A DNA stretch of 64,000 nucleotides. Origin: Octopus sinensis (taxonomy: Eukaryota). The notes under the pieces were generated by a model. That model did no database searches. It was given only the letters and a program-made list of their open reading frames with translations, and was not told the origin of the DNA. Position 1 is the first letter of the stretch. Each line of letters starts with the position of its first letter. The translations under genes were made by a program, and so were the position numbers. Positions 12,791 to 28,124 of this stretch are shown in pieces. The stretch is from NCBI RefSeq assembly GCF_006345805.1, contig NC_042999.1, positions 65,720,001 through 65,784,000 of the forward strand, read 5' to 3'.

Positions 12791-13757
12791 GGTCGATGCA
12801 GTTGATGACTAATTAGTACTTCCATAAGTTAATGAGTATGTGAAATGCATGAAAGGAGTAGAATAATGAAACCTCTTTATGGTAATCTCTGTTCCAGCGT
12901 TTAAAATTGCTTGAGATATTAACAGAAGGAAAGGCAAGAAATTTGTGTAATGTTGGGCACAGTTGATTTGCTACTTGTTAGATAAATGAATAAGGAATTA
13001 AATCATATGAGGAAGAAAGAAAACGGACATTCTCTCATGCGGTTTGCGCAACCTATGCACAATAGAGGATGCCTATACTTTATAACTGGGTAACTTCTGT
13101 TCCTTTAAGTATCTTTTTATCTATTGCTACATAAAACATTGCAAGCAAGTGATATATGGCAATAATTACATGATTTGATGCACTGGGATGCTGTCATTTC
13201 ATTAGCATGTTAAATAACACTGGAAAATTATGCAAAGATGAAAGAAGCAGTCAAACCATAGCGATATGTGAACTAACAATAAAACTGATTTTCCTAATCA
13301 CATAGTGCAGCGCTTTACCTGTTCTACAAATTTTCTGCTTCATTTCATCATGTATAAGATTGAAATTTTCATGCTATAAATGAGTGGCGCAATTGATTAG
13401 CAAAGAAAGTCTTTTGTATTTCATATTGCGTCTAACTTGTAGATCAAATATGATTATAGCTGACACACAAAAAATGCTAAATAACCTTTGTCTACTCCTG
13501 ATGTAAGCACTAGGACAGTCATTTGAAGAGAAGCGCCATTCGAATAGAGCGATCCGATACTTTAAGTATCACCACGTGAGATTCGAAACCGGAGTACAAA
13601 GAAGAGCGAAAAATACTGCTTAACTAATTTGCCACCTGCACTTCATTATGTATTACGGGGAAATTTAGAGACTCTTTATTACTTCTTTTATCAATAATTC
13701 TGGGTAGTAAAAGTAAAGTACTTTTCCGAGTTATATGTCCGGTTTCCCGGTTTCCAT

Positions 13758-13829
<72 letters not shown>

Positions 13830-13834
<5 letters not shown>

Positions 13835-14112
13835 CAAATACCAACAGAACGGAACAACCACCAAGAAATCCTACCACACTCTACACCAGAAAAGTACACC
13901 TAAAACACACCCCACACTACCTACACCAACCCCAAAACACCTACAGAGGCCCACCACACCAGTTCGAAAATAGACATACCAACAGAGCAGAACAACTACC
14001 AAGAAATCCAAACACACTCTACACCAGAAAAATGCATTTAAAACGCACCCCACACTACCTACACCAACCCCAAAACACTTATAGGGTCCCACCACACATT
14101 CCACGAACCTAA
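13830..14112 (+). pseudogene. ORF1 fragment with a 138-bp (46-aa) tandem duplication
   Basis: Units start at ~13839 and ~13977 (TNRTEQPPRNPTTLYTRKVHLKHTPHYLHQPQNTYRGPPH / TNRAEQLPRNPNTLYTRKMHLKRTPHYLHQPQNTYRVPPH). Confidence 0.5.
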
Positions 14113-14209
14113 GAGCCACAACATACAATACTATAAAATACAACCCACATAACCAAACCAAAACGCTACTACCAAACATCCACCCCAGGAACCAACCATA
14201 CAACCATAA

Positions 14210-14452
14210 CAAACAACAAATGCACTACGGAGGAAACAACTACCAACACATATACCTGATGAACTAAGACGGAACACTAGGTTCAACAACAGACTCCAGA
14301 ACAGAGCACCACAAACTCACTCTGACAATTATAACAACATGAGACAGATAAATAATAGCTTTGAACATAACTACACCAACCATTTTTTAGACCTTACACA
14401 CAGGAACAGGGACACACGATGGCAAAGGACAAACAAAAGAAACCTCAGGTAA
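14210..14452 (+). pseudogene. C-terminal remnant of an upstream ORF1 (…NYTNHFLDLTHRNRDTRWQRTNKRNLR*) overlapping the RT ORF
   Basis: 80 open codons between TAA 14207-14209 and TAA 14450-14452. The stop lies 34 nt into ORF2, whose frame is -1 relative to this one. Confidence 0.55.
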
Positions 14453-16716
14453 TTAAGATAATCAATCTCTCAAACAAAGAACTTACACCTAACGAAATAA
14501 GCATACTCTCCAAAGGACTTAAATTTACACCTACCCCACAACGTTCTAATTACTATGAAATGAAAGATGATATTTCGGAATTTTGCAGAAAACTAAGACT
14601 CACCGAGGCATTTCAAGACAAACAAATAGAGGAGGACTCAATAGCTAGAAACAAGAGCAATTACACCCCCACCAAGGGAAAGAATAAAGCCTTAGACCGC
14701 TATTGTGACTACATAACTAATTTCCCGTTTCAATTCATCAAGAAACAAAAACACAGCCCTAACTTCAACAAAAGAGAATGGAACGACCTCATCAAACTAA
14801 GAGAAGACAAAACAATAACAATTAAGGAGGCAGATAAGGGCAACGCGATAGTAATAATGAATACAAACGATTATAAAAATTTAGTGCTATCCCTATTAAG
14901 AGATGAAACGTATTATGAAAGGGCCCAACAGTATAACCAGCAAAAAATAATGCATAACCTTAGGACATTAATCAACACATACCAAGAAGGACTCACGAAC
15001 AAGGAGTATGAATACATCACTAACTTCAAATACAAATCGAGTTTGTTCTATGGTATCCCTAAGGTACACAAAAGCCAAACCATTAGAGAAACGTGCAAAA
15101 CATCCACCGACACACTCATCAAAATCCCTTCACCAAATGATCTTAAACTAAGACCGATAATAGCAGGGCCAGCATGTGAAACTCACCGCCTCAGCAATTT
15201 CTTAGACACACTTCTTAAACCTTTCCTAAAACACATCAAAAGCTACGTAAGAGACGATATAAATATGCTCAACCACCTCCCTAAAACAGTCAATGAGAAA
15301 ACCCTTCTAGTATCATTCGACGTAGTTAATTGTTATTCTAACATCCCTCACAACCTAGGAATAGAAGCAATCACCTTCTGGCTGAATAACTACCCCTTTG
15401 AACTCCCAACTCGCATAAACAAAGACCTTATAATAGAAGGACTTAGATTCATTTTAGAGAACAATTATTTTATTTTTGACAATGATTTCTACAGGCAAAG
15501 ATCGGGAACAGCGATGGGCACGCGTACTGCACCATCTTTTGCCAACCTAGTGATGGGATACCTCGAGAAAATACTATACCGGATAACACTCGAGAAATAT
15601 GGAAACACCTTCGCCACCTATATCCATAACAACTGGAAAAGATACCTCGATGACTGTTTCATCATCTGGGACAAAGGTATAGAGAAACTTGAGGAATTTA
15701 AAATATTATTAAATGGAATAAATGACAATATACAATTTACGATGGACCACAACGAAAAAGAATTACCATTTTTAGACATCCTCATTAAGAAAAACGGCAA
15801 CAAAATAGAGACAGATATCTACTATAAACCGACAGACTCTAAACAGTACCTACCCTTTGATTCATGCCACCCACGACACACTAGAATGAATGTCCCTTTT
15901 TGTTTAGCTAGAAGGATTTGCACCATAATATCAGACACAAACACCCGACACACACGCCTCCAGGAACTTAGAACCACACTCACAAATAGAAACTATCCAC
16001 AGCCCCTAATAGACAGTGCAATCCAACGGGTACTTAAATTAAGTATAGAAGACCTGAGACAAACAAAACCAAAAAAAAAAAAACAATTAAAAACCCTTCC
16101 CTACATCTCTACACACAACCCACTCAACAATGAGGCCTTCAACACCATACTACAAAGCACAGCCCTACTAAAGGGAGACCCAAAGATGAACCGGATCCTC
16201 GAAACACACACCATCATTAAAAGTAAACGGCAACCAAAATCCTTGAAAAGGATTTTAACCCAAGCTACACTGCACTCAACATCAACCACAAAACCAGCAG
16301 TTAGAAAATGTGGAAGGCCCAACTGCGGAATTTGTGTCATCTTGAAAGAAGGATCAGAATTTATACTGGAACAAGGCCACCAGTTCACCATTAGAACAAA
16401 CTTCACCTGCGCATCAGAAAACTTAATTTACGTCATAACATGCGCAGGCTGCAATAGGCAGTATATAGGCCATACAAAAAATAGCTTACGTAACAGGATG
16501 GCGGTGCATAAATCACAAATTAGAAACCCTGATTACCGCAAAATACCGGTCAGCGGACACATAGATAGATGTGCTGGAAATGTAAATCCGAAATTTACAA
16601 CTAACCCGCTCTATAAATTCAGTGACAACGCAACCTTCACACAACGCCAAAATAAAGAACTATATTTCATAAAAAAATTTAGACCAAGTTTAAACACCCT
16701 GGGCCAGGAATACTAA
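14419..16716 (+). CDS. Penelope-like retroelement polyprotein (RT + GIY-YIG endonuclease), probably Neptune clade; uninterrupted 765 aa
   Basis: PLE RT motifs GIPKVHK, LRPIIAG, SFDVVNCYSNIP, GTAMGTRTAPSFANLVMG, RYLDD, LPFLDILI, YYKPTDSKQYLPFDSCHP. Cys linker CGRPNCGIC. GIY-YIG motifs NLIYVITCAGCNRQYIGHT, LRNRMAVHK, ELYFIKKFRPSLN. Confidence 0.95.
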   Translation: MAKDKQKKPQVIKIINLSNKELTPNEISILSKGLKFTPTPQRSNYYEMKDDISEFCRKLRLTEAFQDKQIEEDSIARNKSNYTPTKGKNKALDRYCDYITNFPFQFIKKQKHSPNFNKREWNDLIKLREDKTITIKEADKGNAIVIMNTNDYKNLVLSLLRDETYYERAQQYNQQKIMHNLRTLINTYQEGLTNKEYEYITNFKYKSSLFYGIPKVHKSQTIRETCKTSTDTLIKIPSPNDLKLRPIIAGPACETHRLSNFLDTLLKPFLKHIKSYVRDDINMLNHLPKTVNEKTLLVSFDVVNCYSNIPHNLGIEAITFWLNNYPFELPTRINKDLIIEGLRFILENNYFIFDNDFYRQRSGTAMGTRTAPSFANLVMGYLEKILYRITLEKYGNTFATYIHNNWKRYLDDCFIIWDKGIEKLEEFKILLNGINDNIQFTMDHNEKELPFLDILIKKNGNKIETDIYYKPTDSKQYLPFDSCHPRHTRMNVPFCLARRICTIISDTNTRHTRLQELRTTLTNRNYPQPLIDSAIQRVLKLSIEDLRQTKPKKKKQLKTLPYISTHNPLNNEAFNTILQSTALLKGDPKMNRILETHTIIKSKRQPKSLKRILTQATLHSTSTTKPAVRKCGRPNCGICVILKEGSEFILEQGHQFTIRTNFTCASENLIYVITCAGCNRQYIGHTKNSLRNRMAVHKSQIRNPDYRKIPVSGHIDRCAGNVNPKFTTNPLYKFSDNATFTQRQNKELYFIKKFRPSLNTLGQEY

Positions 16717-16885
16717 AACAAAAGATAAGTCCTCCGAAAAGGAGAAGCAAAATTCCACCACGGCCGCTACCTTAAACAGACACTCGCACTGACGGAAATA
16801 TGCCTTAGTAAAAAAGGGAAAAAAATTCTTTCGTGCAAATCTGACCCTGATACATACGATACAGCTAAGGGTCAGACCCGATTCT

Positions 16886-17275
16886 GATTGGTCAACAAGT
16901 TGATGACGTCTAGTTCTGCTAGAATGGACAGGATACAAACAGGGGACAGTCATTAGTCAGAATATTGATGACGTCCTTTTCTGCTTGACTAGTCACCTAA
17001 CAAGTACAGACAGGGGGCAGATCTAATGTAGCTATAAGTCGTGATTGGGCAGAATCTGGATGACGTCCCGTTCTGCTTGACTAACGAAGCGACTGGTCAA
17101 AACAGGAAACAGACAAGAGGCAGTTATACGATTGGACAAAATAATGATGACGTCCCGTTCTGCTTGACTAAAGCCACCTAACGAAACGATTGGTCAAAAC
17201 GTTGATGACGTCACGCTACGCTGGACTGACCACCTAACAGGCATTATAAAACCGAGCAATTCACAAGACTCACTA
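16886..17275 (+). promoter_or_regulatory. Candidate PLE pseudo-LTR promoter: 5 x (CCAAT box/ATTGG - 12 nt - CRE-like TGACGTC), TATA box, Inr
   Basis: ATTGG at 16887, 16952 (ATTAG), 17044, 17131, 17189; TGACGTC at 16904, 16969, 17061, 17148, 17206; TATAAAA 17245-17251; CTCACT with A at 17272. Confidence 0.65.
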
Positions 17276-17733
17276 GAACCACCCAGCGAACACCCACCAT
17301 GGGTCATCACAATTGCTTAAGGTAAAAATGAATTCCTCGCTCTTTCGGAAACATCAATCTTCTGTATTGACTGCTTTCCACCACTTTGATCTGTTTTTTG
17401 TATTGAATACGTATCGCCACCGTGGGCCACTGCTTCGAACACTTTGAACATATAGCATGAATGAACTTACTTCAAACTATATATCAACTATACATGAACT
17501 CTAAGATGTCTGACTCCGTTGTGTATTATAAATGAATTTCTTGTGTTTGACGGCATGAGCTGTCTTTTTTTATATATAACCTTTTTTTGATAAATTTCAT
17601 TTCAGGAACTGAAACATGTTATAATGTATATATAAAAATTAAAAATTGTTTAATATAGCAGCATTTTCGAACTTCATTTTTTACAAATATATACCTACTC
17701 GTATACGAGCTAATCTTAATATAAATATATATA

Positions 17734-17764
<31 letters not shown>

Positions 17765-18824
17765 CCCACATGGAGGGGAAGCCGGTCCTTCACAGGATTA
17801 CTCATTTTACCAACCGAGTGGACTGGGGAAATGAAGTGTCTTGCTCAAAAACAAATCGGGTCACTCGGTCCAGGAATCGAAACCACAACCTTAGGATCGG
17901 GAGTCCAAAATCCTAACCACTAAGCTACGCATCTCCACAAGTGTAGGTGGTGATATATGAAATAATATTTCTTTCAGTTGAGAACTATAATGAATGTCGG
18001 AAACGATCAATTGAAAACACTTCATCTATCCATCCCGAAAATTCGAAATCTGAACGTAAGGTAGCAGAAAATCTGCATGACAATTTCGCTGGCTTAATTA
18101 TGTATTACGAGGCAATTTACAGACCTCTGTTACTTTACACCTCTTCCTTACAGCACTAATAGTACAAAGGTATATACTATACTACATGGTCACTGTTTTA
18201 CTTGAGAACTGTATTAAATAAATTGTAATTTGTGGATACGATGTCGTAATGTATTCCCAGTCGGACGAAATTTACTTTACTTTTCCTGTTTATGAGCTTG
18301 GCAAACGCAAGATGGTCACGAATATATTTCGTATTTCCCTTGAAACATTGAACCACTATAATTTCTTCCCACTCAGAAATGGAAAAAAAATAATAATATA
18401 ACAATTTAGCAATCAATAATTCTACAGACTTTGACAATAATGATGACTAATCATTTAAAAATATTCCTTCTACAATAACGAAAGAGCTTTACAAGTAACT
18501 GTACGATCAATACAAATAGTTTTCTCACAAAAATTGACCTCATGCTGGTCCCACCAGCGGTCGTTTCATTTTTAAGAGTACCTCCATTCTATTGCTTGTT
18601 TCATCTTGAAGCTATAATTATGTTGTGCAGAATACGAATAATTTTGGCAATGCCGCTGGTTTTATTTTATCTTCGATAGATTTTCGCTCTTTTCAGTGGC
18701 GGTTCACAAAATATAGGAGGCAAGAAAGTTGTTTGCTGATGTTTATTTGTACACAGAGGCACACATACACGAACACACATATGTATACAAAAATATATAT
18801 ATACATATGTGTCGCCATGATAGA

Positions 18825-24915: not shown

Positions 24916-25772
24916 AAAGAGTATGAAATACAAGAAGGAAAATGCACACACTTCACATAGTTTTTATATTTTTATAAATATATTTAATATTGTTTGTCGA
25001 CCGGTTTCGCTTTCTCTAATCATGACATTAAAATTATTGTCCTTCGTATTTTCTTAAGATTTTAGTTCATGTTGTGTGTGGAAAAGTTTGTGAATGAATG
25101 ATTCAATAAGTAGAAGAATCTAAGGGGGTGGTAACTGGTGATAGGGGAGATAATTGTTCATCTCTCGGGGAGGGGGAAATAAACAGAAAACTCAAACGCT
25201 AAGGTAAAGAGAAGAAATATGTACAGTATCTGTCTGATAGATTCTTTTGCGGTAACACCTAGAGAGATATTCATATAATATCCAACCAAACTTCAGTTAT
25301 CCCCCTCTACCATTGCAAAGAAAATATCTCTATACAACAAAGTGTAAATAAAGAAAAGTTATTCATCGAAAAATACAGAATACGTCTAACTATTAACGCA
25401 TAACCAACTTTAATGTCAGTATATATTTTAATTCATGATCACATATGTGTCACTCTACACAATTCTTCTCAATAGTTAAGCGTTTGAGTTTTTGTGTATC
25501 TTCATCTCCTCGAAATATGAACAATAACCTCCCCTATCCACAATAATAACGATCAGCGATTATCTCCCTTTAGAATTTTCTACTTGTTCACTCATTCATT
25601 CATAAACTTCTCCACACACAACATAGACTAAAACCTAAAATACGAAATGATCATTTTAATGTTATGATTATCGAAAGTGAAACGAGTCGACAAACAATAT
25701 GAAATATATTGAAACTATGTGGTGTCCATTTTCCTTTTTTTATTATATGTGTGTGTGTGTGTGTGTGTACAA

Positions 25773-25805
<33 letters not shown>

Positions 25806-28124
25806 TGTATGTATGTATGTATGTATGTGTGTGTGTATGTATGTGTGTGTGTATGTATGTGTGTGTGTATGTATGTGTGTGTGTATGTATGTGTGTGTGT
25901 ATGTGAGAAGGCGAAAGTCTTAGTGGTTAGAGTATTGCACTGAGGATCTCTAAGATCGTAGGTTCAATTCCCAGACTGTGTGTCACGTTGTGTTCTTGTG
26001 TAAACCACATCTCTTCACGTTTCTCCAGTTCACTCAGTGGTAAATGGGTGACTCTGCGATAGAATAGCTTTCCAATCAGGGAAAATATTGGCCTGCTTTA
26101 CTAACTAAAATGGTGACATCATTCGAAAGTAAAAACAATGAGAAACGCTTTTGTAAACAGCGATGTATAACAATCGCTTAACAACAGTTGTTGGCTCGTT
26201 TACGTTTCCGCGTTAAAATATAAGTATTGAGATTGATTCGTTTAATAAATTCCAAGGTTGTACCCCACTATGTCTGCAGTGTAATGACTGAAACAAGTAA
26301 AAAATCTATATGTAATATAGATAGCAGTAGCTTACACATATTTCCTGCCTACCAAATTCATTCGCACCTTATTGGTGGATCCGATGGTAATAATTTCAGG
26401 TGCCGTGAAGAGAGACTGAAATCGAAACCACGTGTTTGAGAAGCAAACTTTTTAACCACAAAGAGATGTCAACGCCTATATTACTTAAATCTAATCAACT
26501 TAATCATAAGATCTTTTTTAAAATAAATCTTACTACAGTCGAGACGAAGGTGCGGAAGAAATGAATCGGAGAAGAGTGGAATAAATAGGACATATTTTTT
26601 TTTGTACAGACGATTTGTATATAATTAAGATAATTGAAGACTACATAAGAAGACTTAAGTTTATAACATATAATATTATAAAAAAGTCATATTTTAAAGA
26701 CGTAAGATCTATAATTATTTATGGTAAGACTATAATCAAACACTTCGTTCATAAATAGACCTAAATTTCAGAAACATATTTTACGTAGCAATATAGCCAC
26801 GCCTAACCCTCTTTGCGTAGCATACATACACAAAGATCAAATTACAATTAGTACTATAAAGAAACTAAGCAAAGTAACTAAAACAAAGTCATATGTATGT
26901 TTTTGTGCTGCTGCCTCCCTTCACCGTTTGACAACCTGTGTTAGTGCCTCCTTCTTGACAACCTGTGTTTGATTATAACATTACTACTTACTCGTTTTTA
27001 CGTAATATTCCTAAACGTAATGCAATTACTAGTTTCATAATGTAATCTACGCGGTTGCCAAAAGAAAACGATAGAATAACTATAAGACATAAAAATTAAG
27101 TACTGTTTGACTAAACTTTTCTACGCCATGTTACATTTTGGCTGCAGTCCAATGACTGAAACACCTAACAATTAAAATAATGGTATCTTTGTTTTTAATC
27201 AAATTTAGTCGGATCTCAATTTGCATAGTGACATTCCATTTTATGTAGAATAAAGTAGGTGTCACGATTTTTTTCCATCTCATCTCTAATTAGGTTTCCG
27301 TGTTTATCGACATTTTAAATATTATAATTTCACTTTTGAACATCTATTGTTATGTCGCATAGAATAATTTTCTGTAATAGCAGAAATATTATTTGTTTAA
27401 ACTAATCAACTATCGAATTCGTTTGTTTACTTGGACAACAGAACCATTCGATTTGTCGACTTTCATAAACAGTTTAAAAATGTGTTTAGACATATTTAAG
27501 ACATAGTAATCTTGTCTACAACTACACTCGACACATATTCTCTTCTTCCCTACTTATTTTTCACGTCTAATTTTGTTCTTCAATATATCTTCAATTATTT
27601 TTCGTCTCCAACTACGTCATCTTATTTACTATGTTACACCATTCGTTAAATGATAGTATTTTGACTTTTCTGCTGCGATATTACATACATTTACTAAATA
27701 TTTCTGATGAGCTCTTATGTAGAGATTGGAGTTAGCAGATTGCAAAATATTTTCTGTCTACTTCTGACAAAAAGGCTAGAAATTATTGGGGAGCGTGGCT
27801 AGTCCATTACATTGAATTCGATGTTCAACTTGTACTTATTTGGTTCATAACCAAATTTATGAAAGGCAAACTCGACCTACGTATTATTTGAGCTCAGAAA
27901 AAGGCACATGCAGGGAATAAGTAAACCATGAGAGACTGTAAGATATGAACTTTTCACGTACGATTCATAAAAGTAATGCGATTATCAGTTTCATAATTCT
28001 CAGTACATAATGAAGATTTATTGTCAACATCGTCATGAGAAATCCGGCAAAACGAACAAAAATACTCAGAGTTAAATACTTAACAGTGACCTAATTTAAG
28101 ATTTAAAATGCATTTCACAAATAT

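What the first reader, a model, noticed from the sequence alone, without database searches (positions are those of the whole stretch)
16886..17275. Fixed-spacing CCAAT+CRE repeat array directly behind the RT-GIY-YIG ORF
Seen: five modules, consensus GATTGGnCAnAAnnnTGATGACGTCnnnTTCTGCTTGACT, with periods of 65, 92, 87 and 58 bp. The 12-nt gap between ATTGG (ATTAG in unit 2) and TGACGTC is exact in all five even though the gap and inter-module sequences diverge. The last module has a perfect CRE (TGACGTCA), then TATAAAA and an Inr-like CTCACT 27 nt after the TATA T. Known: ATTGG is the reverse NF-Y box, TGACGTCA binds CREB/ATF bZIPs, and PLEs carry the next copy's promoter in a 3' pseudo-LTR. 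Inference: a stereospecific NF-Y/bZIP composite enhancer multimerised by the element, potentially cAMP- or stress-inducible, that could drive read-out transcription into host DNA. Alternative: RNA hairpins (e.g. GCAGAA…TTCTGC in unit 3) presenting UGAUGA.
Basis: partly seen in the sequence, partly recalled or inferred. Interest (0 to 1): 0.75.

Follow-up and report, generated by a model that had tools for sequence, protein, structure and literature searches.

The report
Retroelement promoter array of CRE sites
The five repeats are real and lie in the 3' untranslated region of a Penelope-like retrotransposon, where related elements also cluster the same bZIP-type (CRE) motif just upstream of a self-cleaving ribozyme, so the array is most likely the element's transcriptional promoter/enhancer.

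Summary
Five modules (ATTGG/ATTAG, 12 nt, TGACGTC, then TTCTGCTTGACT-like) sit at 16885-17229. They are followed by the window's only perfect TGACGTCA, a TATAAAA and an Inr-like CTCACT.

The array lies inside a 5'-truncated Neptune-type Penelope-like element (13830-17718) inserted in a (TA)n microsatellite. It sits between the RT/GIY-YIG stop codon and a candidate hammerhead ribozyme (17580-17627).

No copy of the same family exists in any database searched. In 24 related families whose UTRs no longer align, the stop-to-ribozyme interval carries TGACGT/ACGTCA at 14.7 per kb. The ORFs carry 0.30 per kb and the post-ribozyme sequence 0.43 per kb. The half-sites occur in both orientations, and the modules have duplicated independently in several families. 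In full-length tandem copies the cluster lies 150-250 nt upstream of ORF1.

This supports a promoter/enhancer built from CRE/ATF sites in a U3-like position. The CCAAT box is particular to this family. Its fixed spacing cannot be told apart from shared descent of the duplicated units. Inducibility is untested. The RNA-hairpin and ribozyme readings of the units are not supported. I found no paper describing CRE clusters in these elements. Interest is moderate.

The parts
13761..13829 (.). (TA)n microsatellite flanking the element's 5' end (insertion target)
   Evidence: Read directly. Relatives L001, L002 and L005 also end in (TA)n.
13830..14452 (+). Remnant of the ORF1 C-terminal low-complexity tail. 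The copy is 5'-truncated, has 4 in-frame stops and is open only from 14210 to 14452. It contains a 138-nt tandem duplication at 13838-14097.
   Evidence: tblastn of relatives' ORF1 proteins hits 14282-14452 (..FLD..RNRDTRW..). Translation. Duplication.
14419..16716 (+). Intact 765-aa ORF2: reverse transcriptase plus C-terminal GIY-YIG endonuclease (Penelope-like element)
   Evidence: ORF list. Pfam RVT_1 and GIY-YIG. 552 relatives found, best 58% identity.
16885..16927 (+). Module 1: GATTGG (CCAAT box, reverse) 16886-16891; TGACGTC 16904-16910
16950..16992 (+). Module 2: ATTAG (mutated CCAAT) 16952-16956; TGACGTC 16969-16975; TTCTGCTTGACT
17042..17084 (+). Module 3: GATTGG 17043-17048; TGACGTC 17061-17067; TTCTGCTTGACT
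17129..17171 (+). Module 4: GATTGG 17130-17135; TGACGTC 17148-17154; TTCTGCTTGACT
17187..17229 (+). Module 5: GATTGG 17188-17193; perfect CRE TGACGTCA 17206-17213 (the only one in the window)
17245..17274 (+). TATAAAA (17245-17251) and Inr-like CTCACT (17269-17274; A at 17272). If 17272 is +1, the CRE lies at -66..-59 and the CCAAT box at -83..-79.
   Evidence: Read directly. TATAAAA occurs at 0.38 per kb on the + strand, so its placement has roughly a 0.015 chance. This is an inferred core promoter, not a shown one.
17580..17627 (+). Candidate minimal hammerhead ribozyme. Core UUGAUAA (U3-A8 variant), helix II UUUC/GGAA, GAAA plus the palindrome ACAUGU, predicted cleavage after 17620. It is embedded between perfect 12-nt inverted repeats at 17567-17578 and 17627-17638.
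   Evidence: Covariance model built from 23 relatives gives 14.9 bits, E=0.68 over the whole window but at the expected place. Model covariation. Inverted repeat I9.
17621..17718 (+). 3' tail of the element after the ribozyme
   Evidence: Aligns with the post-ribozyme tail of relative L002 at 66-77% identity.
17719..17764 (.). (AT)n microsatellite at the 3' junction
   Evidence: Tandem Repeats Finder. Sequence.

Best explanation
The array is the upstream promoter/enhancer of a Neptune-type Penelope-like retrotransposon. It occupies the interval between the ORF2 stop codon and the hammerhead ribozyme. This interval is carried at the 3' end of the element's RNA, as U3 is in an LTR element. It becomes the promoter of the next unit when copies lie in tandem (pseudo-LTR). 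Each module offers a CRE/ATF-type bZIP site (GATGACGTC). In four of the five modules there is also an NF-Y-type CCAAT box (CCAATC on the opposite strand). The unit was multiplied by local tandem duplication. The last module, with a perfect TGACGTCA, lies at about -60 from a TATA box and an initiator-like site. Here the element is 5'-truncated and has no downstream copy, so any transcription would run through the ribozyme and the (AT)n into host DNA.

Shown: the motifs, their positions, their enrichment across related families, and their location upstream of ORF1 in tandem copies. Inferred: binding by CREB/ATF and NF-Y, promoter activity, the start site, and any inducibility.
For: (1) The motifs are real and non-random.
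(2) The element's anatomy puts the array inside the 3' UTR. There is (TA)n on both sides, a ribozyme candidate at 17580-17627, and a tail homologous to relative L002.
(3) In 24 related families whose stop-to-ribozyme intervals do not align with each other, ACGT occurs at 18.4 per kb there, against 1.9 in ORFs and 1.1 after the ribozyme. TGACGT/ACGTCA occurs at 14.7 per kb against 0.30 and 0.43. Eighteen of the 24 families have at least 2 ACGT (all loci). Control 4-mers (TCGA, GCGC, CGCG, CCGG, GTAC, AGCT, TGCA) are not enriched.
(4) An unbiased ranking puts ACGTCA first among 6-mers: 17 of 26 loci, 61 occurrences against 1.6 expected.
(5) Half-sites occur in both orientations (25 left-only, 18 right-only, 9 full palindromes). 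This fits a dimeric protein reading double-stranded DNA.
(6) CRE-bearing modules have duplicated independently in relatives: L032 89 nt x3, L015 51 nt x2, L010 17 nt x2, and L002 21 nt x2 (read).
(7) Full-length relatives show the order stop codon, CRE cluster, ribozyme, leader of about 100-180 nt, ORF1 ATG.
(8) More distant PLEs (27-33% identity) have no half-CRE in their 3' flanks.
(9) Published work places the promoter and start site of Penelope and of a Chlamys element in the pseudo-LTR (PMC2377424; PMC8557442).
(10) Within the array, the 9-nt GATGACGTC is the longest invariant run (P=0.03 by column shuffling).
Against: There are no expression data, mapped start site or binding data. No second copy of this family could be found, so constraint within the family is untested. 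In relatives the last CRE is 3-50 nt from the ribozyme, whereas here it is about 375 nt away, so the geometry differs. The CCAAT box is not a feature of the lineage. The TATA and Inr matches are weak evidence in AT-rich DNA. Six of the 24 related families have at most one ACGT, so the motif is not obligatory. The only PLE promoter characterised experimentally (D. virilis Penelope) is TATA-less and internal (PMC2377424).
Confidence: 0.65

Rival explanations
1. The motifs act in the RNA. The ACGU/UGACGUCA palindromes in the 3' UTR would serve as self-complementary contact points that bring two RNAs, or two pseudo-LTRs, together so that the dimeric hammerhead (palindromic helix III) can form. Alternatively they would be recognition sites for the element's ORF1 or RT protein.
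For: The cluster is always transcribed as part of the 3' UTR and lies next to a ribozyme whose helix III is an intermolecular palindrome (ACCGGU/ACAUGU). The motif is itself palindromic. CATG is also mildly enriched (7.9 against 3.3 per kb).
Against: Other palindromic 4-mers (CCGG, GCGC, TCGA, GTAC, TGCA, AGCT) are not enriched, so generic self-complementarity is not what is selected. Most sites are half-sites (43 half against 9 full), which make poor RNA duplexes but valid bZIP half-sites. [quoted passage not shown]
Confidence: 0.12
2. The array is a neutral minisatellite. It arose by replication slippage in a fast-evolving UTR, and the shared motifs are inherited from one unit and have no function in this family.
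For: The units are 65-86% identical in the core, as expected of duplicates. Spacing is kept throughout the core, not only between the two motifs. The within-array test is only weakly significant (P=0.03). This copy is a truncated, probably dead insertion.
Against: The same motif recurs in the same interval in 18 of 24 non-alignable related families and is about 40-fold enriched. Independent duplications of CRE-bearing units occurred in other families. The motif is invariant while the 12-nt spacer keeps only 4 of 12 positions.
Confidence: 0.1
3. The cluster is a DNA landing site for the element's own endonuclease or Zn-finger linker. It would direct new insertions next to existing copies and so create the tandem (pseudo-LTR) arrangement.
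For: PLEs are typically found in tandem. In vitro the anole PLE cleaves near the ORF/pseudo-LTR junction (PMC11167929).
Against: Insertions of this clade sit in (TA)n microsatellites, not next to CREs. The anole enzyme prefers AT-rich DNA (PMC11167929). TGACGTCA is the textbook site of a host transcription-factor family.
Confidence: 0.05
4. Each unit is an RNA hairpin presenting UGAUGA, or a degenerate copy of the hammerhead ribozyme.
For: UGAUGA resembles the hammerhead CUGAUGA box. Module 3 can form a GCAGAA/UUCUGC hairpin (z=-2.35).
Against: The other four modules fold no better than shuffles (z -0.2 to -0.9) and adopt different structures. The module-3 hairpin shows no covariation across units (77.3% of cells paired against 76.8% in shuffles). 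The clade-specific hammerhead model finds nothing in 16886-17275 at E<=10. Rfam finds nothing. No GAAA-palindrome-UH half follows in register.
Confidence: 0.02

Closest known systems
Pseudo-LTR promoter of Penelope-like elements (D. virilis Penelope; Chlamys-3_cRei)
   Same: Regulatory sequence and start site lie in the 3' part of an upstream partial copy. The element therefore needs a tandem arrangement to be transcribed. A hammerhead ribozyme lies in the same pseudo-LTR (PMC2377424, PMC8557442, PMC4209133).
   Different: The Penelope promoter is described as TATA-less and internal (Inr plus DPE RGACGTGY). Here the candidate is an upstream, TATA-containing promoter with multimerised CRE and CCAAT sites. 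I found no paper that mentions CRE or CCAAT clusters in PLEs.
CRE-containing enhancer repeats in retroviral LTRs and viral enhancers, e.g. the three imperfect 21-bp repeats of deltaretrovirus LTRs and the 19-bp CRE repeats of the cytomegalovirus immediate-early enhancer (from general knowledge, not tested here)
   Same: Several imperfect tandem modules, each built around a TGACG(T) core, lie in the U3-like part of a retroelement upstream of a TATA box. Module number varies between lineages.
   Different: The element class is unrelated (PLE, with no integrase and no true LTR). No viral transactivator is involved. The modules here also carry a CCAAT box and a third conserved block (TTCTGCTTGACT) whose reader is unknown.
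ERSE / ERSE-II composite elements (CCAAT-N9-CCACG; ATTGG-N-CCACG) bound by NF-Y plus ATF6 (from general knowledge)
   Same: An NF-Y box lies at a fixed distance from a bZIP half-site. The orientation ATTGG, gap, bZIP site is as in ERSE-II.
   Different: The gap is 12 nt, not 1 or 9. The bZIP site is TGACGTC, not CCACG. The definition is not met.
Minimal dimeric hammerhead ribozymes of PLE pseudo-LTRs (Cervera and De la Pena 2014)
   Same: The neighbouring feature at 17580-17627 and its homologues in relatives have the minimal type-I architecture with a palindromic helix III. The U3-A8 core variant was reported in that paper (PMC4209133).
   Different: This concerns the flanking ribozyme, not the array. 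The array units themselves do not fit the ribozyme. An A3-U8 core variant is seen in relatives L001 and L003-L005.

Membership tests
Penelope-like element, Neptune-type (host element of the array) | [quoted passage not shown] | tested here: met
   Pfam RVT_1 and GIY-YIG. KGLKF and ADKG are invariant in the alignment with relatives. 552 relatives found.
Penelope-like element, Neptune-type (host element of the array) | CX2-5CxxC Zn-finger linker before the endonuclease, and a CCHH motif within it (PMC8557442) | tested here: met
   C631, C636, C639 (CGRPNCGIC) and C675, C678, H697, H714 are invariant columns.
Penelope-like element, Neptune-type (host element of the array) | Insertion into (TA)n. 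Upstream ORF1 with a coiled coil, joined by a frameshift (PMC8557442, Fig. 1 legend). | tested here: met
   (TA)n on both sides. Relatives have a 403-444-aa ORF1 overlapping ORF2. The window keeps only the ORF1 tail, in the frame that needs a -1 shift into ORF2. The coiled coil itself was not tested, and no phylogeny was made.
Penelope-like element, Neptune-type (host element of the array) | Hammerhead ribozyme near the 3' end or in the pseudo-LTR | tested here: inconclusive
   Relatives: strong, with covariation. Window copy: 14.9 bits, E=0.68 over the whole window, but at the expected position with the U3-A8 core. Rfam models miss it.
Penelope-like element, Neptune-type (host element of the array) | Pseudo-LTR (partial tandem) arrangement | tested here: not met
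   This copy has no upstream or downstream repeat of its 3' region (self-comparison empty). It is a solo, 5'-truncated insertion. Relatives L003, L010, L017 and L027 do show tandem arrangement.
cAMP response element (CRE/ATF site) | 8-bp palindrome TGACGTCA, or half-site TGACG/CGTCA | tested here: met
   Five TGACGTC sites, one of them a full TGACGTCA.
cAMP response element (CRE/ATF site) | Bound by CREB/ATF bZIP proteins and confers signal-dependent transcription | not testable with these tools
   Indirect support only: lineage-wide enrichment, orientation independence and promoter-like position.
NF-Y CCAAT box | Intact CCAAT pentamer with favourable flanks, typically 60-100 bp upstream of the start site | tested here: inconclusive
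   Four of five modules read CCAATC(A/G) on the minus strand. Module 2 is CTAAT. Module 5 would lie at -83..-79 from the putative start. There is no enrichment in relatives. Some ACGT-less relatives do have CCAATCAG-type boxes. Binding was not tested.
ERSE / ERSE-II (NF-Y plus ATF6 composite) | CCAAT-N9-CCACG or ATTGG-N1-CCACG | tested here: not met
   The spacing is 12 nt and the second site is TGACGTC.
Hammerhead ribozyme (as a reading of the array units) | CUGANGA, helix II, GAAA, helix III, UH in register with helix I | tested here: not met
   No hit of the clade model in 16886-17275 at E<=10 with filters off. No Rfam hit.

The most novel reading that the evidence does not exclude
The CRE cluster is the ancestral, signal-responsive promoter of a whole Neptune-type PLE lineage that is common in molluscs. 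Transcription of these retroelements would then be wired to CREB/ATF signalling (cAMP, stress). In this family the site has joined an NF-Y box at a fixed phase (ATTGG-N12-TGACGTC, which is the ERSE-II arrangement plus about one helical turn) to form a cooperative composite element that was then amplified five-fold. Solo truncated copies such as this one would act as portable inducible promoters firing into host DNA at (TA)n microsatellites.
Probability: 0.2. Interest if true: 0.65.

Novelty: new variant of a known kind. Interest (0 to 1): 0.45.

Why it matters
Transcriptional control of Penelope-like elements has been dissected experimentally only for Penelope of D. virilis. A CRE cluster conserved immediately upstream of the ribozyme in many otherwise non-alignable families would give this retroelement class a defined promoter architecture that can be tested. 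It would link the elements' expression to a well-understood host signalling pathway. It would also identify a source of portable CRE/CCAAT/TATA promoters scattered through invertebrate genomes. In practical terms, the pair 'CRE cluster plus hammerhead' is a useful landmark for delimiting pseudo-LTRs when annotating these elements.

Tried and rejected
(1) Rfam at gathering threshold on the whole window, and at E<=10 on 13700-17800, gave no hammerhead or other credible RNA family. The hits were only AT-microsatellite artefacts.

(2) I read the units as circularly permuted hammerheads by hand. Helix I and helix II cannot form. The clade-specific covariance model confirmed there is no match in the array.

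(3) Hairpin alternative: per-unit folding and pair counting show no conserved structure.

(4) Search for other copies of the same family. There are none in the window. The best full-length protein relative is 58% identical. A C-terminal fragment query designed to surface partial high-identity copies gave at best 67%. An exact DNA pattern of the module found nothing in genome contigs or viral contigs.

(5) Aligning the window's 3' UTR with relatives' UTRs: only the post-ribozyme tail aligns. The array region does not.

(6) The ERSE/ERSE-II reading is rejected on spacing and on the second motif.

(7) The Hydra-clade assignment is rejected because the GxKF, DKG and CCHH motifs are present.

In the L010, L072 and L073 family individual copies have lost CREs and ribozyme bases alike. 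I therefore used cross-family recurrence instead.

(9) The sigma-70 promoter scanner was not used because it does not apply to a eukaryotic element.

Full report
**1. Observation**

The repeat finder returns one family of five copies starting at 16887, 16952, 17044, 17131 and 17189 on the + strand, with spacings of 65, 92, 87 and 58 nt. The pattern ATTRGNCANAANNNNGATGACGTC matches exactly these five places in 64 kb, against 0.01 expected. GATGACGTC is exact in all five and absent elsewhere, against 0.22 expected.

The 12-nt gap, the perfect TGACGTCA in module 5 (17206-17213), TATAAAA (17245-17251) and CTCACT (17269-17274) are all as described. That TGACGTCA is the only one in the window.

The aligned module core is 43 nt with no indels and 23 invariant columns. 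The 9-nt GATGACGTC is the longest invariant run (P=0.03 by column shuffling). The TTCTGCTTGACT block is intact only in modules 2-4. The long units carry an extra spacer of about 30 nt (family D2).

**2. Context: what the array sits in**

The ORF at 14419-16716 encodes a 765-aa reverse transcriptase with a C-terminal GIY-YIG nuclease. It carries the KGLKF and DKG motifs, a CX5CxxC linker and a CCHH motif. Together these are the published signature of the Neptune/Nematis-type PLEs, not of the Hydra clade (PMC8557442).

Relatives (best 58% identity) come largely from bivalve-symbiont metagenomes and MAGs. The host of the window is therefore probably a mollusc, but this is an inference and is not established.

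Relatives carry an upstream ORF1 of 403-444 aa that overlaps ORF2. The window keeps only its C-terminal tail, with stop codons. The insertion is bounded by (TA)n at 13761-13829 and (AT)n at 17719-17764. Relatives also end in (TA)n. The post-ribozyme tail aligns with that of L002.

The element is therefore a solo, 5'-truncated copy spanning about 13830-17718, and the array is internal to its 1-kb 3' UTR. There is no second copy in the window.

**3. The ribozyme landmark**

Relatives carry a minimal type-I hammerhead with a palindromic helix III (GAAA-CCGG/CATG-U-H) downstream of the stop codon.

An alignment of 23 of them shows strong covariation in helices I and II. There are 72 compensatory cells against 24.7 in shuffles, exceeded in 0 of 500 shuffles, and the covariation score is 0.63 against 0.18. 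Core positions 3 and 8 co-vary as C-G, U-A or A-U.

A covariance model built from this alignment finds a 14.9-bit match at 17580-17627 in the window. This is not significant window-wide (E=0.68). It is, however, at the expected place, about 100 nt before the 3' end, and has a U3-A8 core like the closest relative L008. The model finds nothing in the array.

**4. Comparative test**

No copy of the same family exists in the databases. I therefore asked whether the homologous interval of related families shares the motifs.

Across 27 loci the interval from stop codon to ribozyme has ACGT at 20.2 per kb, against 2.05 in ORFs and 1.8 after the ribozyme. TGACGT/ACGTCA is at 15.1 per kb against 0.41 and 0.54. 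Seven control 4-mers are not enriched.

After collapsing to 24 families whose intervals do not align with each other, the figures are:

| Motif | Stop-to-ribozyme interval | ORFs | After the ribozyme |
|---|---|---|---|
| ACGT (per kb) | 18.4 | 1.9 | 1.1 |
| TGACGT/ACGTCA (per kb) | 14.7 | 0.30 | 0.43 |

Eighteen of the 24 families have at least two ACGT. ACGTCA is the top 6-mer in an unbiased ranking, with 61 occurrences against 1.6 expected. Half-sites occur in both orientations: 25 left-only, 18 right-only and 9 full.

CRE-bearing modules have duplicated independently: L032 89 nt x3, L015 51 nt x2, L010 17 nt x2, and L002 21 nt x2 (read). PLEs at 27-33% identity have none.

In full-length tandem relatives the order is stop codon, CRE cluster, ribozyme, leader of 100-180 nt, ORF1 ATG.

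CCAAT is not enriched overall. Some ACGT-less families do show CCAATCAG-type boxes in the same interval.

**5. Mechanism**

The best reading is a Pol II promoter/enhancer in a U3-like position, built from CRE/ATF sites and, in this family, NF-Y boxes, and amplified by tandem duplication.

With A17272 as +1, module 5 places the CCAAT box at -83..-79, the CRE at -66..-59 and the TATA at -27. This is a conventional layout.

It agrees with published evidence that PLE promoters and start sites lie in the pseudo-LTR (PMC2377424; PMC8557442). It differs from the TATA-less internal promoter described for Penelope.

Binding, activity, start site and inducibility are inferred, not shown. The fixed 12-nt spacing is equally expected from common descent of the units. 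The CRE-to-ribozyme distance here (about 375 nt) is longer than in relatives (3-50 nt).

**6. Rivals**

- An RNA-level role for the palindromes is disfavoured because other palindromic 4-mers are not enriched and half-sites dominate.
- A neutral minisatellite is disfavoured by the cross-family recurrence.
- A landing site for the element's own nuclease is disfavoured by the (TA)n targeting.
- Hairpin or ribozyme-derived units are rejected.

**7. Novelty**

Full-text searches combining Penelope-like elements with cAMP response element, TGACGTCA, CREB or CCAAT found nothing relevant.

The kind of thing, TF-site multimers in a retroelement's promoter region, is well known. Its presence and conservation in PLE pseudo-LTRs directly upstream of the hammerhead appears not to have been described. 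I rate it a new variant of a known kind, of moderate interest.

Noticed in passing
window 17567-17638: Candidate minimal hammerhead ribozyme (UUGAUAA core, a U3-A8 variant; GAAACAUGUU; predicted cleavage after 17620). It lies between perfect 12-nt inverted repeats at 17567-17578 and 17627-17638. Rfam misses it; the clade-specific model gives 14.9 bits.
   Followed up: partly
window 24977-25710: A second, different PLE family is present as two inverted 3'-terminal fragments (arms 74-87% complementary). Hammerheads lie at 24992-25030 (-) with 28.1 bits, E=3.7e-4, and at 25657-25695 (+) with 15.5 bits; both have the core AUGAUUA (A3-U8). An endonuclease C-terminus remnant lies at about 25296-25402. 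The fragments abut a (TG)n/(TATG)n microsatellite at about 25750-25905. Their stop-to-ribozyme interval has no ACGT.
   Followed up: partly
loci L001-L044 (alignment A3): Hammerhead core positions 3 and 8 co-vary across the clade. C3-G8 is canonical. U3-A8 occurs in L008, L009, L017 and the window. A3-U8 occurs in L001 and L003-L005. The U3-A8 variant is published; I did not find A3-U8 in the paper I read.
   Followed up: partly
window 17295-17322 and 17595-17605: An ATG in a perfect CCACCATGG context lies 28 nt after the putative initiator. Seven codons later there is a donor-like AAG|GTAAAA at 17320/17321. An acceptor-like TTTCATTTCAG|G lies inside helix II of the ribozyme candidate. Together these suggest a possible 284-nt intron overlapping the ribozyme, reminiscent of the Penelope 5'-UTR intron. 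This could be chance in AT-rich DNA.
   Followed up: no
window 13838-14097: A 138-nt tandem duplication (89% identity) lies within the A/C-rich remnant of the ORF1 low-complexity tail. That frame has four stop codons, so ORF1 is dead while ORF2 is intact.
   Followed up: partly
protein hits P0028, P0033, P0055, P0060, P0079, P0088, P0112: Full-length PLE RT/GIY-YIG proteins are deposited as proteins of bacterial symbionts (Candidatus Thiodiazotropha MAGs, Solemya velum gill symbiont). This is almost certainly host (bivalve) retroelement contamination of public bacterial assemblies.
   Followed up: no
window 17800-17950 (-) and 25900-25960 (+): Both PLE insertions are followed by sequences that look like tRNA-derived SINE heads (box-B-like GGTTCRAWTCC). 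ARAGORN calls no tRNA gene in the window. This is an impression from reading only.
   Followed up: no
loci L014:1-20, L021:1985-2010, L025: Related families that lack ACGT motifs carry NF-Y-consensus CCAAT boxes (GCCAATCAG; CCAATtagCCAATCA) 70-110 nt upstream of the hammerhead. This hints that CCAAT and CRE are alternative building blocks of the same promoter interval. The counts are too small for statistics.
   Followed up: partly
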